DNA from: Octopus bimaculoides
Lineage: Eukaryota
Assembly (NCBI RefSeq): GCF_001194135.2
Contig: NC_068985.1
Coordinates: forward strand, 71,367,311-71,400,386
DNA: 33,076 bases
Direction: 5' to 3'
A model generated the notes under the pieces. It worked only from the letters and a program-made list of their open reading frames with translations. It ran no database searches and had not been told where the DNA came from. Each line of letters starts with the position of its first letter. The first letter of the stretch is position 1. Positions 2-32,782 of this stretch are shown here, in pieces. Made by a program: the position numbers and the translations under genes.

Positions 2-322
2 GTCGCTCTGACCGCATCTCGGGCAGGTCGGTCCGGTGGTTTTCGAACCGTGTCTGTAGATCTTCTCTCGAACTGGTAGTGCGTCTCGATAGCATTGCCA
101 AGCCAGGGATCTCTGGAAATTATCCATAGGCCCCGGCCCGAACGTCGTCTTGAAAAGGCGGGTTAGGAATTTCTCGTCGACACCCAGGTTTGCCCCGAGA
201 GTGTCGTCAGACCTCCCCTCCACTAGTCCTCTATAGAACGCATTGGTCGTTTGGAAGTTGCACAAGTTTGATCCCGGACGGCAGAGCTGTTGTAGAGCTT
301 GGCGACACTCGCGGTGACTTAT
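2..322 (-). mobile_element. L1/Tx1-type non-LTR retrotransposon ORF2 C-terminal fragment (zf-RVT region), runs off the window start
   Basis: Stop-free minus-strand frame missed by the ORF track: HRECRQALQQLCRPGSNLCNFQTTNAFYRGLVEGRSDDTLGANLGVDEKFLTRLFKTTFGPGPMDNFQRSLAWQCYRDALPVREKIYRHGSKTTGPTCPRCGQSD. The W-x6-LP...CxxC pattern is typical of the L1/Tx1 zinc-binding domain. GC-rich relative to its flanks. Confidence 0.8.
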
Positions 323-335
323 ATATACGTATATA

Positions 336-497
336 GGCGCAGGATTGGTTGTGTAGCAAGTAGCTTGCTTACCAAGAACATGGTTCCAGGTTTAGTCCCA
401 CTGTGTGGCACCTTGGGCAAGTGTTTGCTGCTGTAGCCTCGGGGCGACCAAGCCTTGTACGTGGATTTGGTAGACGAAAACTGAAAGAATTCCGTCG

Positions 498-531
<34 letters not shown>

Positions 532-722
532 CGTCGCCTCACCATCGCTTGATAACCAACCTTGGTGCCTTTACGTCCCCGTAATCTACGCGATTCGGCA
601 AAAGATCCCGATAGAATAAGTACTAGGCTTACAAAGAATAAGTTCTGGGGTCGATCTGTTCGACTAAAGGCGGTGCTCCAGCATGGTCACAGTCAAATAA
701 TTGAAACAAATAAAAGAACAAA
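336..722 (+). mobile_element. tRNA-derived SINE, family A, full length
   Basis: Head GGCGCAGGATTGGTTGTGTAG with a B-box-like GGTTTAGTCCC, body GGCACCTTGGGCAAGTGT...GGATTTGGTAGACG, internal (TG)n, tail GGCGGTGCTCCAGCATGG...GAAACAAATAAAAG. Homologous copies recur through the window. Confidence 0.85.
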
Positions 723-756
723 ATAATATATATGTGTGTGTGAGTGTTATTGTGTA

Positions 757-1446: not shown

Positions 1447-1561
1447 TACACATTCACGTAGACTCTATCATAGTTTGGTTTTACCTGTTCAACATCTGTA
1501 CTGGTTGACACGTGAATATATCAGCGGTTTCCTCTTGCAAAACATAATAATAATTATTATT

Positions 1562-1770
1562 ATTTTAAATTTTTGCCACAAGGGCAGCTTGGGAGAAGTG
1601 GGGATGTGTCGATTACATCAACCCAGGGTTCAACTGGTACTTATTTTATCGACTCCGAAAGGATGAAAGGCAAAGTCGACTTCAGCGGAATTTGAACAAA
1701 GAACTTAGAGCGGGCGAAATACCGCTAAACATTTCGTCCAGCGCGCTAACGATTTTGCCAGTTCGCCATC
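1562..1770 (-). mobile_element. tRNA-derived SINE, family B (CORE-like body)
   Basis: Reverse complement matches ...TTCAAATTCCGCTGAAGTCGACTTTGCCTTTCATCCTTTCGGAGTCGATAAAATAAGTACCAG, the same body as the plus-strand copy at 5361-5565. Confidence 0.85.

Positions 1771-1772
<2 letters not shown>

Positions 1773-1853
<81 letters not shown>
1773..1853 (+). repeat. (AAT)27 microsatellite between two family-B SINEs
   Basis: Perfect AAT run. Confidence 0.95.
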
Positions 1854-1854
<1 letters not shown>

Positions 1855-1983
1855 TCCTCAAATTTAGTGGTGGTGTCTAATCGATTACCTCGACTCCAGT
1901 GCTTGACTGGTACTTATTTTATCGACCCCGATATGATGAAAGGCATTTTGTCCGACGCACTAACGAATCTCTCAGCTTGCTGC
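1853..1983 (-). mobile_element. family-B SINE, internally deleted
   Basis: CTGGTACTTATTTTATCGACCCCG...GATGAAAGGCA joined directly to TTTTGTCCGACGCACTAACG, so the middle is missing. Confidence 0.75.
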
Positions 1984-2009
1984 TTTTTGTTATTATTATT
2001 AATAATAAT

Positions 2010-3875: not shown

Positions 3876-4690
3876 CTTACATCACACTTTGAAGGCTATG
3901 CATTTGCAATACAAGAACAGGAGATTGCTACTAAATACCTAATAAACAAAAGAAACAGTGAAGTCCTTGAAGTTCTAAGATGCAACAGGAAATTTAGATT
4001 ATGTCATATTTCTGTGGAAGACATCACATATATGATTAGCAGCTGCCCAAAAATATCATCAAGGTACTTCCTTTCTATGCGACATGACGCTGTCGCAAAA
4101 GCAATATACAATGCCATTCAGAAAAAAAGACTGCCCAGGAATAACTGTAGAGAATCCCCGTTATTTAGTACATATATCCAAACATCAATCCAAGGAACAC
4201 TGGTGGAACATTTTCATCAAAACATCTGTCAAGTGTAAGCATAACAGACCAAATATTGTTGTTTGGTACAGACAAGCAAAAGTATTTACCGTGATAGAAG
4301 TCCTGATGGTGTGAATATCTCTTTGAAAATAAAAGAGAAAGATGGTAACTATGGATAACTGCTTCGAAACCTCCAGATTACAAATTTACATTGGTACCAA
4401 TAATAATTGGTGTACTTGGTTTTGTGTGTAAATGCTTAAGTGACGCCCCGCATGAGCTTGGATTTTCAGAAAAAGAAATCAGCCAACTAATTCACACACT
4501 AAAAATACAATCTGTATGGGGAACAATAAAAATATGCAAGACTTTTCTCAAGTTTAGAACGTGACATTGTCTTCATTATCTACATTGGAGCTTAGAATGT
4601 TTGTTAGGAACCGGCTCTTTCCCTAGAGGAAGAATTTAAATAACTAAAAACAAGAGAACATACATGCATACATTCATACATACATACCAA
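3876..4690 (+). mobile_element. 5'-truncated, decayed R4/Dong-clade non-LTR retrotransposon (zinc knuckle + RLE domain + 3' UTR)
   Basis: Frames read LTSHFEGYAFAIQEQEIATKYL...FRLCHISVEDITYMISSC...RHDAVAKAIY / WWNIFIKTSVKCKHNRPNIVVW...VIEV / KEKDGNYG*LLRNLQ / YKFTLVPIIIGVLG...GTIKICKTFLKFRT* (stop 4562-4564). Decayed CCHC knuckle, frameshifts and an internal stop. Ends in (CATA)n. Confidence 0.85.
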
Positions 4691-5244: not shown

Positions 5245-5960
5245 GCCTGCTAGAAATAGCAGCCAAATCTCCCTCAATTGAATATAATGTAGTTTTGGGT
5301 ATGCTATATCTAAAAGAAGAAAAAATGTGATGGTTGTCACGTTTGGACTGCATTTTATCTTAGGCAGACGCATTAGAACGCCGGGTGAAATCCTTAGTGG
5401 TATTTCGTCTGCCTATAAGTTCTGAGTTCAAATTCCGCCGAGGTCGACTTTGCCTTTCATCCTTTCGGGGTCGATAAATTAAGTACCAGTTGCGTATTGG
5501 GTCAATCTAATCGACTGGCCCCCTCCCCCAAAATTTCGGGTTTTGTGCCTAGAGTAGAAAGAAGCAAGAATATCAGTCAGACAACGAAGAAACTTTATGT
5601 GGTCGCCACATGTGCTAAAAATATCAGCTAAATCTTTCAAATCGCATTCAAAAATGTAGTTCCAGATATACTGTCTAAAAAGACGAGTGTTCACGACCGG
5701 AATGGTTTTTGAACAGTACCAAGTAACAACGACCTGTTAGAAATCACAGCCAAATTTCTCTCATATCACACCCTACCGTTATATATAACGAAGTATACAA
5801 TGAATCAGCGAGTGAGACCCTGTTAGAAACAGCAGCCAAATCTGCTTCGTATAACAGCTCTATCGTCTTGCAAAGAGAAAGGCACGTTAGATAATGTAGT
5901 TCCATGTTTAAAAAGATAATAAGTGATGGCCACTGTTGGAATGTCTTTCCTGGTTGGTCT
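5245..5960 (+). repeat. cluster of four degenerate copies of an unclassified dispersed repeat (family E, motif TAGAAATAGCAGCCAAATCTCCCTCAA)
   Basis: Motif variants at 5251, 5616, 5738 and 5824. Further copies at about 6850 (+), 9012 (-), 13430 (-), 19800 (-) and 27660 (-). Confidence 0.65.
5361..5565 (+). mobile_element. family-B SINE, near full length
   Basis: GTTCTGAGTTCAAATTCCGCCGAGGTCGACTTTGCCTTTCATCCTTTCGGGGTCGATAAATTAAGTACCAG...GTGCCTAGAGTAGAAAG, with a B-box-like GAGTTCAAATTC. Confidence 0.9.
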
Positions 5961-7094: not shown

Positions 7095-7660
7095 GTAATA
7101 CGAGGCGGAGTTTGAACTCAGAATGCAAAGAGCTGGGATATTTACTGTAATGCATCTTATCCGACGCTCTTACAATTCCGCCAATACACAAACCTCGACT
7201 GGTATTTTATTTATTTGTTGATTTCAAATTTTGGCATAAGACCAGTAAGTTCGGGTGAGGGGCTAAGTCGATTACATTGACCCCAGTGCTCAACTGCTAC
7301 TTATTTTATAGACCTTGAAAGAGTGAAAAGCAAAGTCGACTTCAGCGGAATTTGAACTCAGAGTGTGAAGACGGACGAAATGTCGCTAAACATTTTGCTC
7401 GGCGTGTTAACGATTGAGCGAGCTTGCCGCTTTACTTTAATGCAAAAAATAATGAAACGTCTTAAGATTTTATAATTACTAAACAAGTAACTAAAGAAGT
7501 AATTAAATTAAATAAGCCAGCTCGCTGTCTTATTTTATTTATTTACCGACAACAACAAAAAAGGGTAATGTTGAATTCAATGAGATTTGAACTCAAGTGC
7601 AAAGAGACGTAGAAAATATTGCAAGGCAGCCTGTTACCGAAGATCTAGTGACCCTGCCAA
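7095..7660 (-). mobile_element. three adjacent family-B SINEs (7095-7185 degraded, 7215-7432 good, 7530-7660 degraded)
   Basis: Each contains a variant of GGAATTTGAACTCAG. The middle copy carries the complete body. Confidence 0.7.
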
Positions 7661-8624: not shown

Positions 8625-8869
8625 GATAGAGGATAAAGTATAAAGATCTATATGACTCATAGGGCCGGTTTCCATGGCGCATATATTCCCCCACCGGAAC
8701 GGGACGCCGGTCTGTCGCAGGATTACTCATTTTTGCCAGCTGAGCGGACTGGAGCAACGTGAAATGAAGTGTTTTGCTCAAGAACAAAACGCGTCGCCTC
8801 GTCAAGGAATCGAAACCAGTCTTAAAACCATGAGCACAGCACCCTGACCACTAAGCTACCCGCCTCCAC
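8625..8869 (-). mobile_element. tRNA-headed CORE SINE with a Meta-like 3' domain (family C)
   Basis: Reverse complement: A-box GTAGCTTAGTGG, B-box GGTTTCGATTCC, CORE-like TTCTTGAGCAAAACACTTCATTTCACGTTGCTCCAG..., then CTGCGACAGACCGGCGTCCCGT...GGAAACCGGCCC, which resembles the Meta domain as I recall it. Confidence 0.7.
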
Positions 8870-9336
8870 TGTCGGGTACACCAGGGTATAAATGACACGT
8901 GACAGCCAGATTGGAAGAGGTACAGCCTACTATTGTAGCAGTAGAAGAATGCATCTCTGTCAGCTGCTGCTATGGTTCTTCGTGTTCTTTCAAAATGGAA
9001 GTGTGTGACTTGAGAGAGATTTGGCTGCTATTTGTGGCAAGTCGCACGATGACATAAAAGTTCTCTTGTTGGCTTGGGGATGTGTTTGGGGATGAAGAAA
9101 AGTGATTTTGTGTTTTTTAACGTACTTTTACGTAAATATTATTATTGTTTTGTTTTTGTTTTGTTCCTTTTACGTTTATAATTGCCTGTCTCACTCTACG
9201 AATGTATTTGTGTCTATGTCTGTCTGTCTACCAAAATATCTGTCTGCATACCTATACGAATTGTTATTTAGCAATCTATATGGGTGTATGCATGTATGTA
9301 TGTATGTATGTATTTATGTACGCAGGTATGTGTGTG

Positions 9337-9906: not shown

Positions 9907-10301
9907 TTCTTTTACTCTTTACTCTTTTACTTGTTTCAGTCATTTGACTGCGGCCATGCTGGAGCACCGCCTTTAGTCGAGCAAATCGATTCCAGGACTT
10001 ATTCTTTGTAAGCCTAGTACTTATTCTATCATTCTCTTTTGCCGAACCGCTAAGTTACGAGGACGTAAACACACCAGCATCGGTTGTCAAGCGATGTTGG
10101 AGAGACAAACACAGACACACAAACATATACACATACATACATACGAGCTTCTTTCAGTTTCCGTCTACCATATCTACTCACAAGGCTTTGGTCGGCCCGA
10201 GGCTATAGTAGAAGACACTTGCCCAAGGTGCTATGCAGTGGGACTGAACCCAGAACCATGTGGTTGGTAAACAAGCTACTTACCACACAGCCACTCCTGT
10301 G
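9907..10301 (-). mobile_element. family-A SINE, full length, low divergence
   Basis: Reverse complement gives CACAGGAGTGGCTGTGTGGTAAGTAGCTTG...GGTTCAGTCCCACTGC...GGCGGTGCTCCAGCATGGCCGCAGTC...AAAAGAGTAAAGAG. Confidence 0.9.
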
Positions 10302-10450
10302 TTTGTGCAAGTATCTATGTTTATATGCGTATATGTTTGTATGTATGTATATATGTATGTATGCATGTATGTATGTATGTATGTATGCATGTATGTGTGT
10401 ATCTATGTACGTACGTATGTATGAATGCAAGTATGTATGCATGCATGCAT

Positions 10451-10929: not shown

Positions 10930-11535
10930 TACATAGGTACAAAGCGGGTAATTTTGTAGGAAGGGGTTGGTCCATTCAACCAACCTCGGTACTTGAATGG
11001 GACTTTATCGAACTTTATCTCTTGTTGAGATTTGAAATCAGAACATAAAGAACCACTTTCAATAAGGATGGTTTCTGATTTAAGGACGAGGCCAACAACA
11101 TTAAAGGAAGGGGTTAGTCGATATCAGTGATCCTAGTACTTCACTGGTACTTTATTTTATCGACCCACACTAGGATGAAAGGCAAAGCTGACCTCGACGG
11201 GATTTGAACTCTGAACATTAAGATACAGAACGAATACATTCACACATACAGAAAACGTTTTAAAGATGTCACAAAAGCGTGAGTATATACGAAGTTAAAT
11301 AATAAAAGTGGCAGTGGGCCAAAGATTGGATTCAAATTTTGGTCCAAGGCCAGCAAGTTCGGTGGGAGGGATAAGTCGATTACATCAACGCCTGTGTTCA
11401 GCTGGTACTCATTTTATCGACCCCAAGCAGATGAAAAGCAAAGTCGACCTCGGCGGAATTTGAACGTAAGGAAGAACAAAATGCCGCTAAGCATTTTGCG
11501 CGGCGTACTAACGATTCTGCCAGCTCACTGCCTTC
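10930..11535 (-). mobile_element. three tandem family-B SINEs (10930-11050 degraded, 11065-11235, 11325-11535)
   Basis: Repeated ACTGGTACT...TTATCGACCC...GATGAAAGGCAAAG...GATTTGAAC blocks. Confidence 0.8.
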
Positions 11536-12594: not shown

Positions 12595-12805
12595 TCTTTC
12601 TAATATAGGCACAAGGTTTGAAATTTGAATGGGGGAGCTGTTAAGTCGGTAACACCGACCCCAGTACTTGACCGGTGTTTATTTTATCGCCCTTTAAAGG
12701 ATGAAAGGCAAAGTAGACTTCGGCGGAATTTGAGCACAATGACGGACGGAATGCCACTAAGCTTTTTGTTTGGCATTCTAAAGATTCTGCCAGCTTGCAA
12801 CTTTC
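12595..12805 (-). mobile_element. family-B SINE
   Basis: Complete body: GACCCCAGTACTTGACCGG...AGGATGAAAGGCAAAGTAGACTTCGGCGGAATTTGAG...GATTCTGCCAGCT. Confidence 0.85.
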
Positions 12806-12809
12806 TTAA

Positions 12810-12823
12810 TAACAACAACAGCA

Positions 12824-12882
<59 letters not shown>

Positions 12883-12999
12883 AAGAAGAAGAAGAAGAAG
12901 AAGAAGAAGAAGAAGAAGAAGAAGAAGAAGAAGAAGAAGAAGAAGAAGAAGAAGAAGAAGAAGAAGAAGAAGAAGAAGAAGAAGAATAGTAATAATAAC

Positions 13000-13045
<46 letters not shown>
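12810..13045 (+). repeat. compound (AAT)n-(AAG)44-(AAT)n microsatellite
   Basis: AAG run 12853-12984 with AAT runs on both sides. Confidence 0.95.
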
Positions 13046-13494: not shown

Positions 13495-13829
13495 GATTAC
13501 AATACTGGCACTTCGTCGGTTACGACGACGAGGGTTCCAGTTGAACCGATCAAAAGAACAGCCTACTCGTGAAATTAAGGTGCAAGTGGCTGAGCATTCC
13601 ACAGAAATGCGTACCCTTAATGTAGTTCTCAGGGAGATTCAGCGTGACAGAGAATGTGACAAGGCCGGCTCTTTCATATACAGGTACAACTCATTTTTAC
13701 CAGCTGAGCAGACTGGGGCCACGTGAAATAAAGTGTCTTGCTCGAGCACACAATACGCCGCCGGGAATCGAAATCACGAGCTTACGATTGTGAGCCGAAT
13801 ACGCTAACCACTAAGCCACGCACTTTCAC
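13495..13829 (-). mobile_element. tRNA-headed CORE SINE with a long distinct body (family D)
   Basis: Reverse complement: A-box TGGCTTAGTGG, B-box GATTTCGATTCC, CORE-like GAGCAAGACACTTTATTTCACGTGGCCCCAG...AAAAATGAG, body ...GAATCTCCCTGAGAACTAC..., tail GGAACCCTCGTCGTCGTAACCGACGAAGTGCCA. Confidence 0.8.
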
Positions 13830-14714
13830 AGCTTAGAATACTAAAACACAAAACAAATCAAATATTTCTGCGGCCAAAAGACTTTGAGAGTGAGAGATGT
13901 CAAAAGTTTCCTCCAATCGATAGGTGAGTGTATGACAAGGACATTAAATAGTGACAGGACAATAAATAGATCGTCTATCTACAGCGGATTGGATTCAAAT
14001 GTCTCTTCTCGTACAATGACTTGATTGACCTTTTGGTTCATGTCATTAACGGAGACGAGGGAAATGATTTAGGATTAAGGATTTCTATATAACAACTATG
14101 GAACCAAGAAGCCTACCATAACATTCCTACTACATCTTTATATGTAGGATTAGTCCTTTTGTCATCTCATCATCATTGTTACTATCGCATTCGTCCCCAT
14201 CAACGTCGACATCATCATGGCCGACATCATCATCGTCATCGTCACCATCATGATTATCATCATCGTCATCGTCATCATCATCGGTTAAAAGCATGATTAA
14301 CTTAGGTATTTACTTTTGTCAGTTTGTGTTCTGTGTTCTGTGTTCCAGTCAGTCCCTCTGGAGTCGATATAAACGAAGTTGAATGTTGATTGCATGACAA
14401 AAACCAGAATCCCCGTAGAACTCTGCGTACAAACTCTGGCAGTATTCAACAAACGTCAATATGTGTTCTTAGTTCAATACCTACAGAGGCAAGATTTTCA
14501 TCTTATCCATTAGATGAGGTGAAATCGATAAAATTAAATAGCAGCCAAGAACCAAAATTAGCTAAATATTTGCAATAAAAGTTGTATGTATTATATTATA
14601 TCATATTACACACACTCACACATACATACATACAACATACATACATACATACATACATACATACAAACATACCTACATACATACATACATACATAACGTT
14701 TGTTTTTATGTTCA

Positions 14715-15575: not shown

Positions 15576-15779
15576 TTCGCGACAAAACAACAAATCAAGA
15601 AAAGAGTAGAACACAGTATAGAAACATGTAAATCAACCCGGATACATCGATTCTCGTCCAATCACAGAACTTAAGCAACATCGAACCAAGTATTTTGCGA
15701 TTAGGTGGGTGACCGCGTGAAAGTCCTACACACTGTAAATATATGCTTTATTCTTTCAAGGCGGTAACCAATCATGGCT

Positions 15780-16164
15780 GCAGAGGCGTGACTATGTTGT
15801 AAGAAGCTTGCTTCTCATCCACATGGTTCCGGGTTCAGTCCTGCTGCGTGTCACCTTGAGCGAGTGTCTTCTACTATATCCTCGACTAACCAGAGCCTTG
15901 TGAGTGGATGTGGTTGATGGAAACAGAAAGAAGCCCGTCGTACATGTGTGTGTGTCTGCGTTTATCACCCCACCACTGCTAAACAACTGATGATGTGCTT
16001 ACGTCTATGTAACTTAGCGGTTCGGCAATAGAGTCGCTAGAATAAGTATCAGGCTTTAAAAAAAAATACTAGGGTCAATTCATTCGGCTAAAAATTCTTC
16101 AGGGCGGTACCCCAGCATGGCCGCAGTCTAATGATTGAAACAAGTAAAAGGTGAAAGTAAAAAG
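15780..16164 (+). mobile_element. family-A SINE, diverged
   Basis: GCAGAGGCGTGACTATGTTGTAAGAAGCTTGCTT...GGGTTCAGTCC...GCATGGCCGCAGTCTAATGATTGAAACAAGTAAAAG. Confidence 0.85.
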
Positions 16165-16199
<35 letters not shown>

Positions 16200-16239
16200 C
16201 ACACAGACACACACATAATATATATATATATATATATAA

Positions 16240-16311
16240 GGATGCTGTTTGTTGAATGGTAGCACATCAACCTCTCGTAAAAGGGAGTAAGTTCGATTCT
16301 CACAGTTTCTA
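16240..16311 (+). pseudogene. tRNA-like unit (tRNA-Thr(CGT)-derived pseudogene or SINE head)
   Basis: Acceptor GGATGCT/AGTTTCT (6/7 pairs including wobbles), D arm TGTT-GAATGGT-AGCA, loop CTCGTAA, T arm GTAAG-TTCGATT-CTCAC. The anticodon stem is largely unpaired, so it is not a functional tRNA. Confidence 0.55.
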
Positions 16312-16325
16312 ATATCTAACCTTCT

Positions 16326-16385
16326 TATTTTCACTGACGATGCCTCAGCATGGACGCAGCGCATGAGCCGAAATGCATATAATGC
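16326..16385 (+). ncRNA. type-I hammerhead core 1 (helix I 3' strand not evident)
   Basis: CUGACGA (16334-16340), helix II GCCUCA/UGAGCC (5/6 bp), GAAA (16370-16373), palindromic AUGCAU helix III, AUA triplet. Confidence 0.5.
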
Positions 16386-16640
16386 GTAGTGGTTAAGAGC
16401 GTGGTCTACTAACCCCAGGCTTCCGAGTTCGATTCCAGGCAGTGACCTGAATAATAATAATAATAATAATGATAATAATAATAATAATAACAACATCGAA
16501 AAATACCTTAGGAATGAGGACCCAGGTTCGAAATTTCCCCAGGACACCTGATGAAGGCTGGAGGGTATATCAGCCGAAACCTTGTGTTAAGAACAAACAA
16601 GATGAGGACAAATATCCATGTAAATAATGTGCAATTATTA
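16375..16640 (+). mobile_element. tRNA-headed, (AAT)n-containing, hammerhead-bearing SINE-like element
   Basis: A-box-like TGCGTAGTGGTT (16383-16394), anticodon-loop-like CTACTAA, B-box GAGTTCGATTCC (16425-16436), (AAT)n at 16450-16490, hammerhead at 16543-16588, AT-rich tail. Confidence 0.7.
16543..16588 (+). ncRNA. minimal type-I hammerhead ribozyme motif 2
   Basis: GACAC-CUGAUGA-A-GGCUG/GAGGGUAUAU/CAGCC-GAAA-CC-UU-GUGUU. Helix I GACAC/GUGUU (5 bp) and helix II (5 bp) pair. Helix III reads ACCU instead of the self-complementary ACGU, so this copy is probably impaired. Confidence 0.75.
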
Positions 16641-17155: not shown

Positions 17156-17639
17156 TTTCTTTATTAGCCACACAGGGCTCAACATAGAAGGGACAAAATA
17201 CAAATGTAGAGTTTTTCTTTTCGAGGGGGGGCGAAAAAAATAAAAAAATAAATAAATAAAATAAAAATTTTTTTTTTAAAGTGGGGACAACGATGGAAAA
17301 AGAACATCGCAGAACGTTTGGGGTATTTACAAAAAATATGAAATAATACAGAAAATAGGTAGATAGATATTCCTGTATTTATATATAAAATATACATGCG
17401 TATTTTCATCTTGGTGCATATTTATTTCATGCGCTAGCGCGCGCGTACACGTGAGCGTACATTATGCATGCATTGATCTATCGTTTTCACTACACTTGTA
17501 ACTGTGTTATAATTTTCCTACCATATAAGACCACCATCATCGAGATTGCTTCTGGCAAATTATCTACATTTCTACCTCTTGCTTATTTTCTGAGGCATCG
17601 AAACTCGGAAATTCCTGTGGAATCTGTTAATCGTCTGTC

Positions 17640-17859
17640 ATTGACTTGTTTCAGTCATTAGACTGCGGCCATGCTGGGGCACCGTCATGAAGAGTTTTAG
17701 TCAAACGAATCGACCCCAGGACCTATCTTTTTAAAGCCTGGTAGTGATTCCTATTTGTCACTTTTGCTGAACTAGTAAGTTACGGGAACGTAAACATACC
17801 AACACCGATTGTCAAGTGGTGTTGGGGAACACACACACAAAAGCATACACACCGACACA

Positions 17860-17909
<50 letters not shown>

Positions 17910-18591
17910 CACACACATACACAGACACATATATATGTGTGTGTGTGTATATATGTATATATACATGTGTATGTATGTATGTATANNNNNNNNNNNNNNN
18001 NNNNNNNNNNNNNNNNNNNNNNNNNNNNNNNNNNNNNNNNNNNNNNNNNNNNNNNNNNNNNNNNNNNNNNNNNNNNNNNNNNNNNNNNNNNNNNNNNNNN
18101 NNNNNNNNNNNNNNNNNNNNNNNNNNNNNNNNNNNNNNNNNNNNNNNNNNNNNNNNNNNNNNNNNNNNNNNNNNNNNNNNNNNNNNNNNNNNNNNNNNNN
18201 NNNNNNNNNNNNNNNNNNNNNNNNNNNNNNNNNNNNNNNNNNNNNNNNNNNNNNNNNNNNNNNNNNNNNNNNNNNNNNNNNNNNNNNNNNNNNNNNNNNN
18301 NNNNNNNNNNNNNNNNNNNNNNNNNNNNNNNNNNNNNNNNNNNNNNNNNNNNNNNNNNNNNNNNNNNNNNNNNNNNNNNNNNNNNNNNNNNNNNNNNNNN
18401 NNNNNNNNNNNNNNNNNNNNNATATATATATATATACATACGACGGGCTTCTTTCAGTTTCTGTCTTTCAAATCCCCTTGGTCGGCCGGGGCTATAGCAG
18501 AAAGACACTTGCCCAATGTTCCACACAGTGGAACTGAACCGGGAATCACGTGGCTGGAAAGCAAGCTTCTTACCACATAGCCACGCCTGCG
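17640..18591 (-). mobile_element. family-A SINE with a greatly expanded internal microsatellite spanning a gap
   Basis: Tail at 17640-17830 and head at 18435-18591 are in the same orientation, separated by (CA)/(TA) repeats and Ns. Confidence 0.8.
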
Positions 18592-18924
18592 ACTATGATA
18601 TTGTATGTTTCAAGGTTTCATGGTTTTGTTCTTTCTCTGTTTCTTGCTTTCTGTCCCCTTCTTTCTTTGGCTATTTCATCTGCCTGCACTCACGTGCTCG
18701 GACACATACTTAAGTGCATTCATACAGACACACAGTGACACACACGGATGTAAACGTAAACAAGCCGAGACATACAGACACACGGATACGAACACACACA
18801 CATGCGGACAAACAGACGTCAAGATACATGGGGACATAACAGCCGCTCATACATATACACATGTATATTCACACACACATGCATAGATATAGGCGTGTAG
18901 TACACGTCCACGCGTACATGGGCT

Positions 18925-21722: not shown

Positions 21723-22763
21723 AATCTACGGAGAAATCATTAAATTTGCCATGTTTGAATGTCTCCTATGTAGGTTTGCACACACACACACAGACAGACA
21801 GACACACACACACACAGACAGACACACACACACGCACGTATATATATATATTTAAGAAAATAAGATGACAAAGGAATAAACAATTATCTTTTGAACTTCA
21901 TTAGCTTACAGCTGTTTCTGCTATAGATGCAGTGGACTCAAAGTTGATTGCCTGAGTAACACCTTATAGCTTCTTCAGAGCCTTGAATATGAAGTGAAAT
22001 TTATTTGGGAAAAGAATTACTTTTATGCATATAGGGGGTAGCATTAGCAATGAGAAAGCCAACATCTATGTTGGGGATTAAAAGCAGGGGCTCCCGTGCA
22101 TTGAGTTCTACTATATACATATATAGATAGATAGAGAGAGAGGTGGAGACAGGGACAAAGACAGACAGTGACAGATATATATANNNNNNNNNNNNNNNNN
22201 NNNNNNNNNNNNNNNNNNNNNNNNNNNNNNNNNNNNNNNNNNNNNNNNNNNNNNNNNNNNNNNNNNNNNNNNNNNNNNNNNNNNNNNNNNNNNNNNNNNN
22301 NNNNNNNNNNNNNNNNNNNNNNNNNNNNNNNNNNNNNNNNNNNNNNNNNNNNNNNNNNNNNNNNNNNNNNNNNNNNNNNNNNNNNNNNNNNNNNNNNNNN
22401 NNNNNNNNNNNNNNNNNNNNNNNNNNNNNNNNNNNNNNNNNNNNNNNNNNNNNNNNNNNNNNNNNNNNNNNNNNNNNNNNNNNNNNNNNNNNNNNNNNNN
22501 NNNNNNNNNNNNNNNNNNNNNNNNNNNNNNNNNNNNNNNNNNNNNNNNNNNNNNNNNNNNNNNNNNNNNNNNNNNNNNNNNNNNNNNNNNNNNNNNNNNN
22601 NNNNNNNNNNNNNNNNNNNNNNNNNNNNNNNNNNNNNNNNNNNAGGACGATGGCGATGACGAGGAGGACGATGGCGATGACGGGGAGGACGAGGAGGACG
22701 AGGAGGACATGCATATATATACACACATACATACATACATACATACATACATACATACATACA

Positions 22764-23180
22764 TGGGTCTGTGGCTCGAAGTTTGCTTCTCAGCTACATT
22801 GTTCCGGGTTCCATCCCCCTGCATAGCACCTTCGGCAACTGTCTTCTACAATATCCACAATGGCCCGGCCCGACCAAAGTCTTGTGAGTGAATTTGGTAG
22901 ACGGAAACTGAAAAGATACCCATCGTATATGCATATATCTGTGTGTGGTGGTGGTGGTGGTGGTGAGAGGGGGGTCTTTGTGCTTGTGTTTGTCCCTCAA
23001 CACTACGTGACAACTGATGTTGGTTTGTTTATGTCCCTGTAACCTAGCGGTTCGACCTAAGAGTCCGATTGAATAAGTACCAAACTTTAAAAAAAAGAAT
23101 TACTGGGATCGATTCGGTCAACTAAAATTCGCGAAAGCGGTGCTCCAGTCTAATGAATGAAACAAGTAAAAGATTAAAGA
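22764..23180 (+). mobile_element. family-A SINE, diverged
   Basis: GCACCTTCGGCAACTGTCTTCTAC...CGACCAAAGTCTTGTGAGTGAATTTGGTAGACGGAAACTG...GAAACAAGTAAAAG. Confidence 0.85.
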
Positions 23181-23188
23181 TAATACAT

Positions 23189-23222
<34 letters not shown>

Positions 23223-24288
23223 GTATATGTATATATATATACACGTACATACATACATACATACATACATACATGCAAGCGTATATACATATGTAGATAT
23301 ATACACACACACACGTATGTATGTATGTGTATAAAGCATCTCTTATATTAGATAAGGACTTGTAAACAAATTTCAGTTTGTGTATATTTAAAAATGTGTA
23401 ATTATATGTTTATGTGCGTATGCTTGTATGTAATTAAATACATACATATATATATATATGTATATACATATATGTGTGTGTGTGTGTGTGTGTGTGTATG
23501 TATAAATATATATTTGTATATATATATATATGTATGTATATATGTATATNNNNNNNNNNNNNNNNNNNNNNNNNNNNNNNNNNNNNNNNNNNNNNNNNNN
23601 NNNNNNNNNNNNNNNNNNNNNNNNNNNNNNNNNNNNNNNNNNNNNNNNNNNNNNNNNNNNNNNNNNNNNNNNNNNNNNNNNNNNNNNNNNNNNNNNNNNN
23701 NNNNNNNNNNNNNNNNNNNNNNNNNNNNNNNNNNNNNNNNNNNNNNNNNNNNNNNNNNNNNNNNNNNNNNNNNNNNNNNNNNNNNNNNNNNNNNNNNNNN
23801 NNNNNNNNNNNNNNNNNNNNNNNNNNNNNNNNNNNNNNNNNNNNNNNNNNNNNNNNNNNNNNNNNNNNNNNNNNNNNNNNNNNNNNNNNNNNNNNNNNNN
23901 NNNNNNNNNNNNNNNNNNNNNNNNNNNNNNNNNNNNNNNNNNNNNNNNNNNNNNNNNNNNNNNNNNNNNNNNNNNNNNNNNNNNNNNNNNNNNNNNNNNN
24001 NNNNNNNNNNNNNNNNNNNNNNNNNNNNNNNNNNNNNNNNNNNNNNNNNNNNNNNNNNNNNNNNNNNNNNNNNNNNNNNNNNNNNNNNNNNNNNNNNNNN
24101 NNNNNNNNNNNNNNNNNNNNNNNNNNNNNNNNNNNNNNNNNNNNNNNNNNNNNNNNNNNNNNNNNNNNNNNNNNNNNNNNNNNNNNNNNNNNNNNNNNNN
24201 NNNNNNNNNNNNNNNNNNNNNNNNNNNNNNNNNNNNNNNNNNNNNNNNNNNNNNNNNNNNNNNNNNNNNNNNNNNNNNNNNNNNNNNN

Positions 24289-24339
<51 letters not shown>

Positions 24340-25829: not shown

Positions 25830-25884
25830 GGTTTAGAAGTTTGATTCACACTCATTAATTCATTAATATTATCAAAACGACTAA

Positions 25885-26330
25885 GGCGGTGAGCTGGCAG
25901 AAACGTTAGCACGCCGGGCGAAATGCTTAGCGGTATTTCGTCTGTCTTTACTTTCTGGGTTCAAATTCCGCCGAGGTCGACCTTGCCTTTCATCCTCTCA
26001 GGATCGATAAATTAAATACCAGTTGCATACTGTGGTCGATCTAATCGACTGGCCCCTCCCTAAAAAATTCGGGCATTGTGCCTAGAGTAGAGAAGAATAT
26101 TATCAAGATGAGCAAGACGGCGATCTGGCAGAATCGTTGGCACGCCGGGCGACATGCTTAGTGGCATTTCATCCGTCTTTGCATGCTGAGTTTAAATTCC
26201 GCCGTGGTCGACTTTGCCTTTCATCCTTTAGGCGGTCGATAAAATAGTACCAATTGATCTCTGAAGTCAGTCTAATCGATTTATACCTCCCACGAAATTG
26301 CTGGCCTTGTGCCAGAATTTGAGATCAATT
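25885..26330 (+). mobile_element. two tandem family-B SINEs (25885-26098, 26115-26330)
   Basis: Both begin GGCG(G)TGAGCTGGCAGAA / CGATCTGGCAGAATCG and carry the full CTTTCATCCT...GTCGATAAA body. Confidence 0.9.
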
Positions 26331-26837: not shown

Positions 26838-27080
26838 ATCTTTTATCTTTTACGTGTTTCATTCATTTGACTGCGGCCACGCTGGAGCACCGCCTTGAAG
26901 AATTTCTAGTCGAATCAATCGACCCCAGCCCCCTTCTTTTTTTTTTCGTTTTAAAACTTAGTACTTATTCTATCGATCTCTTTTTACTGAACCGCTAAGG
27001 TTACGGGGGCCATAAACACACTAACACTGGTTGTCAAATGGTAGCGGGGGGTAAAAAAAAACAACCACAAACATACACAC
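26838..27080 (-). mobile_element. family-A SINE, 3' half
   Basis: TTTCATTCATTTGACTGCGGCCACGCTGGAGCACCGCC...AACCGCTAAG...GGTTGTCAA. Confidence 0.8.
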
Positions 27081-27125
27081 ATCCATCCATCCATCCATCC
27101 ATCCATCCATCCATACATACATACA

Positions 27126-27155
<30 letters not shown>

Positions 27156-27156
<1 letters not shown>

Positions 27157-27462
27157 GGTAAGAAGCTTGCTTCCCAACCACATGGTTATGGGTTCAGTCC
27201 TAGTGCGTAGCACCCAGGGCAATTGACTTCTTCAATAGCCTCGGGCCGACCAAAGCCTTGAGAGTGGGTTTTGTTGATGGAAACTAAAAGAAGCCCGTGT
27301 GTGTGGTTTGGTGTGTTTACAGTCCCATAACTTAGCGGTTCGGCAAAAGGATATCATGCTTTAGAAAACATAAGTACTGGACTCGATTTGTTCGACTAAA
27401 ATTCTACAAGATGGCGCTCCAAAATGGCCGGGATCTGACTGAAACAAATAAAAGATAAAAGA
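27156..27462 (+). mobile_element. family-A SINE, internally deleted
   Basis: TGGTAAGAAGCTTGCTTCCCAACCACATGG...CCTCGGGCCGACCAAAGCCTTG...GAAACAAATAAAAGATAAAAG. Confidence 0.85.
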
Positions 27463-27842
27463 CGTCTCCAGCAATTAATAGACGCAGTTCACGCATTAAT
27501 ACTATGTATAGCTGTGTGTCACACCTGCCGCTTTCATTGTCTATATTGTTTAATACCTGGTAAATTCTGAGCAGTTAGACGTTATTAAAGGCATTCAGTT
27601 TCTCTGAATAAATTCACTCGATCTTCGTTATCATCTTATAAGCAGCACGGTTTGATTTGAGAGAAATATAGGTGCTATTTCTAACAAGTCAAGTGACCGT
27701 GTAAAGAAGTTTTCATTGGCTCGTGTTGTGTGTTTGATGGGGATTACATAAATAAATCACTGGTTAATAAAAATCATTCACATACGCTCGAATAACTATG
27801 AGAAAACATAAGTGTAGATAAGAGAATTGCTAGGTAGTATAA

Positions 27843-28265: not shown

Positions 28266-28479
28266 TTGCTAAAGATTGGTTTCTTTTTTATTTATATATT
28301 TATTTTGATTTACTAGTTTCAGCTCGAGAGCTGCGGCCATGCTGGGGCAATTTATTTTTCTCTTAATTTTAATTTTATCTTACGTTTAGGTTCACATGTG
28401 ACACAGGACCTCCAGTCAATGTGTTGGGGGTAGTTAAGCGCAGTTTTGACTCGTAAGTTGTTGGACGGATAGTGTAGCG

Positions 28480-29635: not shown

Positions 29636-29680
<45 letters not shown>

Positions 29681-29682
<2 letters not shown>

Positions 29683-29980
29683 TTCAGGCCAACGAAACCT
29701 TGTAAGTGGATTTCGTACTCGGAAACTGAATGAACACTGTCGTATATATGTGTATATTTGTGTATGTGTGTGCGTGTGTCTTGTGTTTGTACCCCACCAT
29801 TGCTTGACTACTGATGTTGCTGTGTTTACATTCCCGTAACTTAGCGGTTTGGTAAAAGACACTGACAGAATGATTACTAGGCTTACAAAGAATAAATCCT
29901 GTGGTTGATTTCTTCGACCAACGGCGGTGCTCCAGCATGGCCGCAGTCACATGAATGAAACAAGTAAAACAATAAAAATC
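29681..29980 (+). mobile_element. family-A SINE, 5'-truncated
   Basis: CCTTGTAAGTGGATTTCGTACTCGGAAACTG...GGCGGTGCTCCAGCATGGCCGCAGTC...GAAACAAGTAAAAC. Confidence 0.85.
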
Positions 29981-29989
29981 TATGTCATT

Positions 29990-30764: not shown

Positions 30765-30985
30765 TGAGTTCAAATTTTGGCACACGGCCAGCAATTTCGG
30801 GAGAGGGGGTGGGGGCTTATCGATTACATCGACCTCAGCATTCAACTGGTATTTACTTTTACCTATCTCCGAAAAGTTAAAAGGCAGAGTCGACCTCGGC
30901 GGAATTTGAACTCAGAATATGAAGACGGACGAAATGCGGATAGCTCTTTGCTCGGTGCGATAACGATTCAACCAGCTCGCCGCTT
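30765..30985 (-). mobile_element. family-B SINE
   Basis: Complete body: TCAAATTTTGGCACACGGCCAGC...GTCGACCTCGGCGGAATTTGAACTCAG...AACCAGCTCGCCGC. Confidence 0.85.
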
Positions 30986-31689: not shown

Positions 31690-32530
31690 TCTGCATGCAA
31701 ACGGCCTGAACCGATCTGCGCCAAATCCAAGTCCCTTCTGATGAATCTGTGTTGCACTCACCATGTCTCGGTGGGTAAGTGAAGACAAGATGTTATCAGT
31801 CTCTGTTTCTGCTTTCCATTTCGTGGCTGTTTTTTTATATTTGGTGGATTACGCCTGGTTTCTATATTCTTCGAGTCTCTCAGCTTCATCAGCGTTCGTA
31901 CCTTCCCTAGTTTATATATTTCGACTATTGACGCCAGTGGTTACTGCAACGAGTCTCTTTTATGATAGAGAGCTGAATTGTTCAGTATCTGAGCTAGGCC
32001 TAGCCACTTTCTAATGAACACATTACACTTTTGTTCAATGATTTGAACTTGTGACTGTGCCACTTCGTATATTAGAAGTGGCCACGAAAGGCATGAATAC
32101 AAGCCGAACTGTAAGCACCATATTTTATATTTACCTGGTAGCTTTGAGCTATCCATGGCTGTTAACCCATCCTCGGTTTGTTTCATATTTTGCATCCTGC
32201 GACTCCTATCTATCAATGTTCCAGCGTATACACACCCCAAGCCCTTAACGGGTTCTTCCTTGACCGTTGGAATGCTTTCTTCATCTATTTTAAACTTGAC
32301 TCCTTTTTGCACTCCCTTAATAAATGTCAGACTACGTGACTGTTTTTTGCCCTGAATCGCATCCTTGACCACTTCACAAACTCATCTAGCCTCAAGAAGG
32401 CACCCTGCGTGATTTACTTGCCTGTCGACAGAAGTGTCACTTCATCCATGAAGACCTTCTTGGGTGATTGTACATGGGTGATTTGTTCCGAAAAGTCCGC
32501 TGCTTTCAAAAATCATCTCCATGAAAAGGA
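31690..32530 (-). mobile_element. decayed Hero-clade (R2-superfamily, RLE-type) non-LTR retrotransposon fragment, RT motifs 5-7 plus thumb
   Basis: Minus strand across frameshifts: MEMIF / SPKKVFMDEVTLL / LDEFVKWSRMRFRAK / SRSLTFIKG...IPTVKEEPVKGLG...LPGKYKIWCLQFGLY...WPLLIYEV...IRKWLGL...ALY...LQ*PLASIVEIYKLGK / TATKWKA...KGLGFG. This matches Hero ORF signatures as I recall them. Confidence 0.8.
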
Positions 32531-32574: not shown

Positions 32575-32782
32575 ATTGATTTCAAATTTAGGACAAATGC
32601 AAGAAATTTAGGGGGCGGGGTATGTCGATAACATCGACCCCAGTGCTCGACTGCTACTTATTTTATCGAACCCGAAAAGATTAAAGGCAAAGTCGACCTT
32701 GACGGAATTTGAGCTCAGAACATGAAGATGGGGGAAATGCTGTTAACCATTTCACCAAGGGTACTAACGATTCTGAGAGCTA
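32575..32782 (-). mobile_element. family-B SINE
   Basis: ATCGACCCCAGTGCTCGACTG...AAAGGCAAAGTCGACCTTGACGGAATTTGAGCTCAG...ACTAACGATTCTG. Confidence 0.85.

What the first reader, a model, noticed from the sequence alone, without database searches (positions are those of the whole stretch)
16240..16640. Tandem [tRNA-like Pol III head + hammerhead ribozyme] units: a candidate ribozyme-terminated SINE / retrozyme-like system
Seen: two different tRNA-like heads (16240-16311, Thr(CGT)-like; about 16375-16445, ACT loop) are each followed by a type-I hammerhead core (CUGACGA...GAAA at 16334-16373; CUGAUGA...GAAA at 16548-16579). Both have a minimal helix III. Known: minimal type-I hammerheads with palindromic helix III occur in Penelope-like element pLTRs and work as dimers; Schistosoma Sm-alpha combines Pol III boxes with a hammerhead; retrozymes are hammerhead-delimited non-autonomous elements. 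Inference: these may be Pol III-driven non-autonomous elements that use self-cleavage to define their ends and borrow a Penelope-type RT/GIY-YIG. Finding two unrelated head+ribozyme versions back to back is what makes this unusual. I do not know whether this family is already catalogued.
Basis: partly seen in the sequence, partly recalled or inferred. Interest (0 to 1): 0.85.

Follow-up and report, generated by a model that had tools for sequence, protein, structure and literature searches.

The report
Octopus SINE pile-up with one mini-hammerhead
This stretch of octopus DNA is a pile-up of decayed tRNA-derived SINE copies; one of the two proposed ribozymes is a chance look-alike in an ordinary SINE tail, while the other is a convincing copy of the minimal hammerhead already known from Penelope-like retroelements.

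Summary
The window is Octopus DNA, dense in microsatellites and tRNA-derived SINEs.

**Hammerhead 1 (16334-16373) is not a ribozyme.**
- It is a diverged copy of the 3' tail shared by about 10 CORE-type SINE copies in the window.
- Only this 1 of 10 tails has CUGANGA.
- It has no helix I.
- A TTTT run separates it from its head.
- Its "helix III" is built from a target-site duplication plus the next element.

**Hammerhead 2 is probably real.**
- 16543-16588 fits the Penelope-like-element (PLE) minimal type-I hammerhead almost completely: helix I of 5 bp, CUGAUGA, a bulged A, G10.1-C11.1, helix II of 6 bp, GAAA, U16.1, H17.
- The chance rate is about 2.5e-4 per window.
- A covariance model built without it scores it 32.8 bits, the only significant hit.
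- It lacks the palindromic 15.2/16.2 pair and has no partner copy, so this copy is probably inactive.

**Context.** The arrangement tRNA-like head, (AAT)n, hammerhead module recurs in an O. bimaculoides gene model. The head part is more diverged than the hammerhead part, which favours a separate, younger insertion into the (AAT)n tail.

**Verdict.** Partly supported. This is a new member of a known kind, not a tandem ribozyme-SINE system.

The parts
15753..16175 (+). Full copy of the abundant ~400-nt CORE-type tRNA-derived SINE, resembling OR2 by my recall. Its tail is a stem-loop, then GAAAC, then (GTAAAAGA)n.
   Evidence: nhmmer with the profile of the window's own copies gives E=1.5e-118. 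See alignment A1.
16166..16238 (.). (TA)n/(CA)n microsatellite, the probable insertion target.
   Evidence: Tandem Repeats Finder and the sequence itself.
16240..16376 (+). Unit A, a short degenerate tRNA-related SINE. Head at 16240-16311, linker with TTTT at 16328-16331, and a 3' tail domain at 16334-16373 that is 'hammerhead 1'.
   Evidence: The tail is homologous to the CORE-type SINE tail: BLAST E=2.7e-4 to two other tails, nhmmer hits exactly 16334-16373 at E=0.033, alignment A4. No tRNA or hammerhead call.
16234..16239 (.). Putative target-site duplication ATATAA, 5' copy.
   Evidence: Read from the sequence. Low-complexity context, so weak evidence.
16377..16382 (.). Putative target-site duplication ATATAA, 3' copy. 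It overlaps the palindrome AUGCAU (16373-16378) that was read as helix III of hammerhead 1.
   Evidence: Read from the sequence.
16383..16449 (+). Unit B, a tRNA-derived SINE head. Box A-like site at 16382-16392, box B-like site at 16426-16436.
   Evidence: Resembles other tRNA-type heads in the window. The antisense translation matches the C-terminus of P0001.
16450..16490 (+). (AAT)13.7 array, either the tail of unit B or the target of unit C.
   Evidence: Tandem Repeats Finder. The second copy, P0001, has a shorter array.
16494..16620 (+). Unit C, the hammerhead-bearing module. The 5' end is defined by the P0001 copy. The 3' end is only guessed from an AAT-like remnant at 16621-16629.
   Evidence: 21/21 residues identical to P0001 over 16495-16557. 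No other copy in the window.
16543..16588 (+). Hammerhead 2, a minimal type-I hammerhead. Helix I GACAC (16543-16547) pairs with GUGUU (16584-16588). Core CUGAUGA at 16548-16554. Bulged A at 16555. Helix II GGCUGG (16556-16561) pairs with UCAGCC (16570-16575). GAAA at 16576-16579. CC at 16580-16581. U16.1 at 16582. U17 at 16583. Predicted cleavage between 16583 and 16584.
   Evidence: Descriptor scans and simulations. The minimal-hammerhead fold equals the minimum-free-energy fold of the 46-mer, -12.0 kcal/mol. Covariance models R2 (32.8 bits) and R3 (16.0 bits) both rank it first. Related motifs occur in metagenome contigs.

Best explanation
The region 15.75-16.65 kb is a head-to-tail pile-up of decayed retroposons in an Octopus genome. 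In order, it holds:
- a full CORE-type tRNA SINE;
- a (TA)n microsatellite;
- unit A, a short tRNA-related SINE that uses the same LINE-style 3' tail domain;
- unit B, a second tRNA-derived SINE head ending in (AAT)n;
- unit C, a module of about 130 nt inserted in or after that (AAT)n.

**Unit A (inferred).** It was made by Pol III transcription of a source gene and copied into the (TA)n tract by a LINE reverse transcriptase that recognises the tail. Its CUGACGA...GAAA is an accident of this diverged tail.

**Unit C (shown by sequence and structure statistics).** It carries one complete minimal type-I hammerhead of the kind found in the pseudo-LTRs of PLEs and in their non-autonomous derivatives.

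**How it works (inferred).**
- In the source element this motif cuts the multimeric or read-through transcript after U17, here between 16583 and 16584.
- It does so by pairing with a second copy, because it has no helix III of its own.
- The PLE RT/GIY-YIG machinery then inserts the product, with a preference for microsatellites.

**This copy (inferred).** It is solitary, its 15.2/16.2 positions (C, C) cannot form the dimer helix III, and no PLE coding sequence is nearby. It is most likely an inert relic.
For: **Organism and SINE families**
- The antisense translation of 16408-16557 matches the C-terminus of UniRef A0A0L8FR24_OCTBM.
- About 10 copies of one SINE and two further families lie in the window.

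**Hammerhead 1 is a SINE tail**
- BLAST and nhmmer hits; alignment A4 shows CUGANGA in 1 of 10 tails.
- The hammerhead pairing is not kept in the other tails: helix III 35% paired, helix II 51% paired.
- Not found at E<=10 by any of three minimal-hammerhead covariance models.
- T4 at 16328-16331 and ATATAA repeats bracketing unit A.

**Hammerhead 2 is a minimal hammerhead**
- It has features listed for PLE minimal hammerheads in PMC4209133: an unpaired nucleotide between 9 and 10.1, G10.1-C11.1, a long helix II, and a helix I of 4-5 bp.
- Chance rate is about 2.5e-4 per window or lower.
- It is the only hit in the window. The same descriptor finds 3 hammerheads in one 15-kb eukaryote-like contig, which serves as a positive control.
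- A pattern taken from its core and helix II retrieves 3 distinct loci, two of which (L006, L003/L005) have a complementary helix I of a different sequence although helix I was not in the pattern.
- Covariance model R2, built without it, gives 32.8 bits and E about 4.5e-7. Fully independent R3 gives 16.0 bits, the top hit.
- The paper states that most such motifs occur singly and are probably truncated PLEs. Solo retrozyme monomers are reported in the 2026 preprint.

**Unit C is separate from unit B**
- 0/21 versus 5/18 residue differences between the two copies, p about 0.015.
Against: - The 15.2/16.2 pair is C, C, which is not palindromic. This fails one of the four emergent features of PLE minimal hammerheads.
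- The fully independent model gives only E about 0.08, and E-values from these models are rough.
- L006 was retrieved with a pattern taken from hammerhead 2, so R2 is not fully independent.
- No RT/GIY-YIG remnant and no second copy of the motif lie in the 33-kb window.
- No octopus PLE consensus could be consulted, so the link to PLEs rests on architecture only.
- Both known copies of unit C have the same 5' end and follow the same kind of SINE head. Random 5' truncation of a PLE would not give that; a defined short element or a composite SINE fits it better.
- Only two copies of unit C are known, and only one each of units A and B.
- No eukaryotic genome database was available.
Confidence: 0.6

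Rival explanations
1. Unit B, (AAT)n and unit C form one element: a Pol III-transcribed, tRNA-headed SINE whose 3' module carries a PLE-type minimal hammerhead. It would resemble the schistosome Sm-alpha and would be mobilised by PLE machinery.
For: - The same order (head, AAT array, module) with the same module 5' end recurs in the O. bimaculoides gene model P0001.
- Unit B has box A and box B with tRNA-like spacing.
- By inspection, no TTTT run lies between unit B and the hammerhead; the first is near 16807.
- Sm-alpha shows that tRNA-like SINEs with hammerheads exist.
Against: - The head part is significantly more diverged than the module part between the two copies.
- An AAT-like remnant 3' of the module hints at insertion into the array.
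- Only two copies are known, and they might be orthologous or duplicated loci.
- The head is not recognisable as a tRNA by ARAGORN or Rfam.
- An internal 40-nt microsatellite in a SINE body is unusual.
Confidence: 0.22
2. Both hammerhead-like motifs are chance matches in decayed SINE debris, and nothing ribozyme-related is here.
For: - No Rfam hammerhead family matches, even at E<=10 on short slices.
- Hammerhead 2 lacks a helix III and the palindrome.
- In wider context its helix I competes with other hairpins, and the fold z-score is only -1.1.
- The finding was selected by eye from an unknown number of windows.
- About 20 chance matches of this grade are expected per 2.7-Gb genome.
Against: - Rfam also misses the related metagenome hammerheads, so its silence says little.
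- The chance rate per window is about 2.5e-4.
- Features that were not part of the search are present: the bulged nucleotide and G10.1-C11.1.
- Models built without hammerhead 2 rank it first in the window.
Confidence: 0.12
3. Both hammerheads are functional and delimit a unit of about 200 nt (16382 to 16583) that is excised as a small, possibly circular, RNA. This would be a retrozyme-like element with two different ribozymes.
For: - Both cores have a bulged nucleotide and G10.1-C11.1.
- Hammerhead 1 has a palindromic AUGCAU after GAA.
- The two helices II share 8 of 12 positions and show one compensatory swap.
- The spacing falls within the 150-450 nt range of animal retrozymes.
Against: - Hammerhead 1 has no helix I in either register.
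- Its CUGANGA is absent from 9 of 10 homologous SINE tails.
- Its 3' half lies in a putative target-site duplication and in unit B.
- The covariance models do not find it.
- The flanks of the two motifs are not repeats of each other.
- No tandem repeat is present.
Confidence: 0.03

Closest known systems
Minimal hammerheads of Penelope-like elements (Cervera & de la Pena 2014, PMC4209133)
   Same: Hammerhead 2 has type-I topology, a CUGANGA/GAAA core, one unpaired nucleotide between A9 and G10.1, G10.1-C11.1, a long helix II (6 bp), a short helix I (5 bp), and no helix III hairpin. It occurs singly, which the paper says is the commonest situation.
   Different: Positions 15.2/16.2 are C, C rather than a palindromic pair. 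No PLE pseudo-LTR or ORF, and no second copy, lies within 33 kb. No family consensus or covariation from octopus is available.
Animal non-LTR retrozymes (PMC7229834; bioRxiv 10.64898/2026.07.22.740005)
   Same: A short AT-rich non-coding module carries a type-I hammerhead. Solo monomers are described, and these elements are PLE-derived.
   Different: There is no tandem array. The module is about 130 nt, below the usual 150-450 nt. The ends do not coincide with the cleavage site. No circular RNA evidence exists.
Sm-alpha / Sj-alpha SINE-like retroposons of Schistosoma
   Same: A tRNA-derived head lies upstream of a hammerhead in a short non-coding repeat.
   Different: Sm-alpha is a single multicopy unit with a canonical hammerhead that Rfam and tRNAscan recognise. 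Here the head and the hammerhead module are probably separate insertions, the head is not callable as a tRNA, and the hammerhead is of the minimal type.
Octopus tRNA-derived SINEs, including the CORE-SINE OR2 (Ohshima & Okada 1994, cited in PMC4758252)
   Same: Units A and B have tRNA-related heads. Unit A shares the 3' tail domain of the abundant CORE-type SINE of this window.
   Different: Units A and B belong to none of the three multicopy families seen in the window. Naming the abundant family as OR2-like rests on my recall of the CORE domain, not on a database match.
'HHR_core' motifs noted in Naiad PLEs (Craig et al. 2021, PMC8557442)
   Same: Hammerhead 1 has the two core boxes at a plausible spacing but does not fit a stem-loop descriptor.
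   Different: Hammerhead 1 sits in a LINE-style SINE tail, not in a PLE.

Membership tests
PLE-type minimal hammerhead | CUGANGA and GAAA core boxes in type-I order | tested here: met
   Hammerhead 2: 16548-16554 and 16576-16579. Hammerhead 1: 16334-16340 and 16370-16373.
PLE-type minimal hammerhead | One unpaired nucleotide between A9 and G10.1, plus a G10.1-C11.1 pair | tested here: met
   Hammerhead 2: A16555, and G16556 paired with C16575. Hammerhead 1: U, then G-C.
PLE-type minimal hammerhead | Helix II of 6-8 bp | tested here: met
   Hammerhead 2: GGCUGG/UCAGCC, 6 bp including one G-U. Hammerhead 1 reaches 5 of 6 with a C-C mismatch at 10.2/11.2.
PLE-type minimal hammerhead | Helix I of 4-5 bp in register, directly after U16.1-H17 | tested here: met
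   Hammerhead 2: GACAC/GUGUU after U16582 and U16583. Hammerhead 1 does NOT meet this in either register: 1 bp or 0 bp, by manual reading. It is also absent from the covariance-model hits.
PLE-type minimal hammerhead | Palindromic 15.2-16.2, which allows a dimeric helix III | tested here: not met
   Hammerhead 2 reads A-C-C-U (16579-16582). Cofolding two copies gives no hammerhead dimer. Hammerhead 1 has the palindrome AUGCAU, but it spans the putative target-site duplication.
PLE-type minimal hammerhead | Lies in a PLE pseudo-LTR, or belongs to a genomic family with covariation | not testable with these tools
   No octopus genome or repeat library was available. None of the window ORFs scanned gave a significant Pfam domain, so no RT or GIY-YIG was detected. 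Relatives from other organisms show helix I covariation, but that set is selection-biased.
PLE-type minimal hammerhead | Self-cleavage, as a dimer | not testable with these tools
   This needs an experiment.
Canonical hammerhead (Rfam hammerhead families) | Reaches the family gathering score | tested here: not met
   No hammerhead family matched at the gathering threshold or at E<=10. Rfam also misses the related metagenome motifs.
Animal non-LTR retrozyme | Tandem repeats of near-identical 150-450-bp monomers, each with a type-I hammerhead | tested here: not met
   Tandem Repeats Finder reports only microsatellites. There is no self-similarity between the two units.
Sm-alpha-like hammerhead SINE | tRNA-derived Pol III head and hammerhead belong to one transposed unit | tested here: inconclusive
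   The arrangement recurs in P0001. However, head and module differ in divergence, p about 0.015.
tRNA-derived SINE (units A and B) | Internal box A and box B at tRNA-like spacing | tested here: met
   Unit B: 2 and 1 mismatches, 33 nt apart. Unit A is only weakly met: 3 and 2 mismatches, by eye. Neither scores as a tRNA.
tRNA-derived SINE (unit A) | 3' tail shared with a LINE or SINE partner, flanked by target-site duplications | tested here: met
   Tail homology. ATATAA at 16234-16239 and 16377-16382 (low-complexity, so weak).

The most novel reading that the evidence does not exclude
Octopus carries a Sm-alpha-like class of SINE: a tRNA-derived Pol III head, an (AAT)n spacer, and a PLE-type minimal hammerhead of a sub-class (GAAA-CC-U-H) that cannot form the usual palindromic dimer helix III. 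Such an element would depend on PLE machinery. A further possibility is that the tail domain of the abundant octopus SINEs descends from such a hammerhead module.
Probability: 0.2. Interest if true: 0.55.

Novelty: new member of a known kind. Interest (0 to 1): 0.3.

Why it matters
PLE-type minimal hammerheads are already known to be widespread in animals. A solitary copy in an octopus extends the list but does not change the picture.

- **For annotation.** The Rfam release 15 copy searched here missed hammerhead 2 and three other minimal-type type-I hammerheads in metagenome contigs. SINE tails can also mimic the two core boxes.
- **What remains open.**
  - Whether the hammerhead module is a short autonomous-looking unit that targets (AAT)n tails, or part of a tRNA-headed SINE.
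  - How a GAAA-CC-U-H sub-class could form helix III.
- **How to settle it.** Both questions could be answered with the public octopus assemblies and a simple cleavage assay.

Tried and rejected
**Searches that gave nothing or did not help**
- Rfam at the gathering threshold and at E<=10 found no tRNA and no hammerhead. This later proved uninformative for minimal hammerheads.
- ARAGORN found no tRNA.
- I looked for more copies of units A, B and C:
  - In the window by BLAST and nhmmer: only the tail of unit A recurs.
  - By six-frame translated searches of the protein collection: one hit for units B/C (P0001) and none for units A/B.
  - By exact look-up of P0001 and of two window ORFs: not on record.
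  - By exact 22-mer scans of metagenome and viral contigs: nothing.
  - By a GTDB genome scan: nothing.
- The ENA contigs that encode relatives of the window's RT fragment contain no octopus SINEs, so they did not help.
- Pfam scans of ORFs near the metagenome hammerheads found nothing.

**Ideas I dropped**
- Unit C as a diverged copy of the CORE-type SINE body: nhmmer gives no hit at E<=10.
- Units B and C sharing a duplicated tRNA 3' half: alignment not significant, p=0.49.
- My own first verdict that hammerhead 2 lacks helix I and a cleavage site. I had wrongly required a helix III hairpin. I corrected this after reading PMC4209133.

**Other readings tested and not supported**
- Type-III and discontinuous readings of hammerhead 2: no partner strand found.
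- The window as the NUP42 locus itself: no other NUP42 exon in the window, which is inconclusive.
Full report
**1. What the window is**

The sequence is rich in microsatellites, about 37% G+C, and has N gaps. A six-frame translated search of the finding's region gave one hit, UniRef A0A0L8FR24_OCTBM, an Octopus bimaculoides gene model named NUP42. Its C-terminus, PSSGVLGKFRTWVLIPKVFFDAI(I)nQVTAWNRTRNLGVS, matches the minus strand of 16408-16557. The window is therefore Octopus DNA.

It is crowded with tRNA-derived SINEs.
- A family of about 400 nt is present in about 10 full or partial copies. Its body resembles the CORE domain. Calling it OR2-like rests on my recall; PMC4758252 lists OR2 as the octopus CORE-SINE.
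- A second family has about 9 copies.
- A third kind of tRNA-like head has a perfect box A.

**2. Checking the observation**

The two core strings are at the stated coordinates. Head 2 has box A-like and box B-like sites 33 nt apart. Head 1 is weaker. Neither head is called a tRNA by ARAGORN or by Rfam, even at E<=10 on a 215-nt slice. No Rfam hammerhead family matches at any threshold.

CTGANGA followed by GAAA within 45 nt is common: 11 such pairs in the window against 2.3 expected. The bare strings therefore mean little.

**3. Hammerhead 1 (16334-16373) is a SINE tail**

BLAST of unit A against the window hits only the 3' tails of other SINE copies. nhmmer with the SINE profile hits exactly 16334-16373 at tail positions 367-406 (E=0.033).

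In alignment A4, ATTTTCACTGACGATGCCTCAGCATGGACGCAGCGCATGAGCCGAAATG lines up with the tail consensus AAATTCTTCAAGGCGGTGCTCCAGCATGGCCGCAGTCAAATGACTGAAACAAG.
- The GAAA belongs to the TGAAAC block; its GAAA columns are identical in all 10 tails.
- CUGANGA is present in 1 of 10 tails. The nearest relative reads CATGACGG.
- The tail ends in 2-3 copies of GTAAAAGA after a stem-loop. From general knowledge, that is the style of a CR1/L2-type LINE tail.

Projecting the hammerhead pairing onto the 10 tails leaves helix III paired in 35% of cells and helix II in 51%.

I could not draw a helix I in either register.
- With the palindrome AUGCAU as helix III, there is 1 bp.
- With the hairpin AUGCAU-AUA-AUGCGU, there is 0 bp.

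Further points against it:
- A TTTT run (16328-16331) lies between head A and the core. It would stop a Pol III transcript.
- ATATAA at 16234-16239 and 16377-16382 brackets unit A like a target-site duplication. Everything 3' of GAAAUGC would then be target DNA plus unit B.
- Three minimal-hammerhead covariance models do not report it at E<=10.

**4. Hammerhead 2 (16543-16588) is probably real**

I first rejected it because no helix III hairpin, valid cleavage site or helix I could be drawn. That was a mistake of descriptor.

Cervera & de la Pena 2014 (PMC4209133) define the PLE minimal hammerhead as:
- type I, with a helix I of 4-5 bp;
- an unpaired nucleotide between A9 and G10.1, and a conserved G10.1-C11.1;
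- a long helix II;
- no helix III, only A15.1-N-N-U16.1-H17, with the two N palindromic so that two copies dimerise.

Read this way, the sequence is GACAC|CUGAUGA|A|GGCUGG-AGGGUAUA-UCAGCC|GAAA|CC|U|U^GUGUU. Helix I has 5 bp, the A is bulged, G10.1-C11.1 is present, helix II has 6 bp, and U16.1 and U17 are in place. Cleavage is predicted between 16583 and 16584. Only the palindrome fails (C, C).

Evidence that this is not chance:
- A descriptor requiring helix I >=4 bp and helix II >=5 bp gave 0 hits in 20 Mb of Markov-simulated sequence. It gave 1 hit in 265 Mb of i.i.d. sequence. That is about 2.5e-4 per window and about 20 per 2.7-Gb genome.
- At the grade of hammerhead 2 (helix II >=6 bp, helix I >=5 bp) there were no hits in 265 Mb.
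- The 46-mer's minimum-free-energy fold is essentially the minimal-hammerhead fold, -12.0 kcal/mol. In wider context other hairpins compete.

**5. Relatives elsewhere**

A pattern fixing only the core and the ends of helix II (CCTGATGAAGGCT N8-16 AGCCGAAACC) retrieved 4 metagenome contigs, 3 of them distinct.
- In L006 and in L003/L005, helix I was not part of the pattern. It is nevertheless perfectly complementary and differs in sequence: UCCC/GGGA and UUGCUAC/GUAGCAG.
- L004 has a different topology. A viral-contig hit (L007) is a classical type-III hammerhead with the same bulged A and GGCU/AGCC helix II.

The descriptor found three type-I hammerheads in the 15-kb contig L005, two of them with the classical short palindromic helix III (GAAAUAUGUC and GAAACAUGUU). 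In the window it found only hammerhead 2. This is a positive control.

Rfam recognises none of these, so its silence on hammerhead 2 is uninformative.

Covariance models gave:

| Model | Built from | Score for hammerhead 2 | Rank in window |
|---|---|---|---|
| R2 | L006 plus two L005 hammerheads, without hammerhead 2 | 32.8 bits, E about 4.5e-7 | only significant hit |
| R3 | the two L005 hammerheads only, fully independent | 16.0 bits, E about 0.08 | top hit |

On the structural alignment, 91% of cells pair, against 22-42% when the partners are slid. The sequences were selected for pairing, so this overstates the case.

**6. What carries hammerhead 2**

The P0001 match shows the order unit B, (AAT)n, unit C, with the same 5' end of unit C, in a second place. 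The other NUP42 exons are not in the window. I could not decide whether that place is a different locus or an orthologue.

Between the two copies, the unit C part has 0 of 21 residue differences and the unit B part has 5 of 18 (one-sided Fisher p about 0.015). An AAT-like remnant (16621-16629) follows unit C.

I therefore favour the following reading.
- Unit B is an older SINE with an (AAT)n tail.
- Unit C is a younger element of about 130 nt with a defined 5' end, inserted into that tail.
- This fits the microsatellite insertion bias reported for PLEs (PMC8557442).
- It also fits the statement that most minimal hammerheads are solitary, probably truncated PLEs, and the solo retrozyme monomers of the 2026 preprint.

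A single composite, Sm-alpha-like SINE remains possible, at about 0.2.

No RT or GIY-YIG sequence lies near. The only RT-like ORF (31941-32372, minus strand) is 15 kb away and of unknown clade.

**7. Mechanism and status of each step**

Shown:
- the sequence architecture and its rarity by chance;
- homology of hammerhead 1 to SINE tails;
- recurrence of the unit B, (AAT)n, unit C order.

Inferred from the literature:
- in the source element the minimal hammerhead cuts multimeric transcripts as a dimer, and PLE RT/endonuclease inserts the product.

Inferred here:
- this copy is inert. It has no partner, and ACCU cannot dimerise; cofolding gives no hammerhead dimer.

**8. Comparison, novelty and verdict**

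Hammerhead 2 meets five of the six sequence features of the PLE minimal hammerhead that I could test here. It fails the palindrome. I could not test family covariation, pseudo-LTR location or cleavage.
- It is not a retrozyme array, because there is no tandem repeat.
- It is not demonstrably a Sm-alpha-type unit.
- My literature search found no paper describing hammerheads in octopus. Minimal hammerheads are, however, reported from cnidarians to arthropods and in vertebrates.

This is a new member of a known kind. There is one plausible PLE-type hammerhead next to, but probably not part of, a tRNA-derived SINE, and one false hammerhead in a SINE tail. Interest is modest.

**9. Unexplained**

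- The GAAA-CC-U-H linker is shared by hammerhead 2, L006 and (one nucleotide shorter) L003/L005. It cannot form the palindromic dimer helix. CC was forced by my pattern, but U16.1 was not.
- Hammerheads 1 and 2 share 8 of 12 helix II positions and show one compensatory swap. The profile search does not link unit C to the SINE tail, so I treat this as coincidence.

Noticed in passing
window 315-731, 9915-10325(-), 15761-16159, 17627-17892(-), 18424-18614(-), 22734-23183, 26838-27085(-), 27118-27467, 29676-29983: About 10 copies of one ~400-nt CORE-type tRNA SINE. Its tail is the stem-loop CAGTCAAATGACTG, then GAAAC, then 2-3 copies of GTAAAAGA, which looks like a CR1/L2-style LINE tail. A tail-only copy lies at 28295-28349(-).
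   Followed up: partly
window 5365-5501, 7266-7434(-), 25882-26050, 32639-32775(-), 1560-1990(-), 11070-11470(-), 30780-30920(-): A second abundant tRNA-derived SINE family with the core GTTCAAATTCCGCCGAGGTCGACTTTGCCTTTCATCC...GGGGTCGATAAAATAAGTACCAG.
   Followed up: partly
window 8770-8870(-), 13730-13830(-): A third kind of tRNA-like SINE head with a perfect box A (TAGCTTAGTGG and TGGCTTAGTGG) and a box B. It is followed by ...TGTTCTTGAGCAAGACA. ARAGORN does not call it a tRNA.
   Followed up: no
window 31941-32372(-): A 143-aa ORF that is the C-terminal side of a reverse transcriptase. Relatives at 57-70% identity occur in ENA metagenome contigs, one with a weak RVT_1 match below Pfam's curated cut-off (25.1 bits against 29.6). 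Whether it is LINE or PLE was not determined.
   Followed up: partly
window 17986-18441 and 23532-24339, among others: The long 'inverted repeats' reported by the repeat finder are runs of N (assembly gaps), not real repeats.
   Followed up: yes
window 12799-13045: A large compound (AAT)n(AAG)n(AAT)n array lies next to a SINE head on the minus strand.
   Followed up: no
L005 3781-3826(+), 5907-5946(-), 14258-14299(+); L003 is the same sequence: A eukaryote-like metagenome contig (Ga0131853_10013589) holds three type-I hammerheads in 15 kb, none recognised by Rfam. It also has a tRNA-like SINE head at 3999-4072.
   Followed up: partly
L006 1709-1718 and 1783-1792: The strand 3' of the L006 hammerhead pairs perfectly (10 bp) with a segment 65 nt upstream. 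This is an alternative to the 4-bp helix I.
   Followed up: no
window 16408-16557(-): In O. bimaculoides, a gene model (NUP42, A0A0L8FR24) ends in an exon made of the antisense of unit C, (AAT)n and unit B. Its splice acceptor lies inside the loop of hammerhead helix II. This is probably an exonised or mis-annotated repeat.
   Followed up: partly
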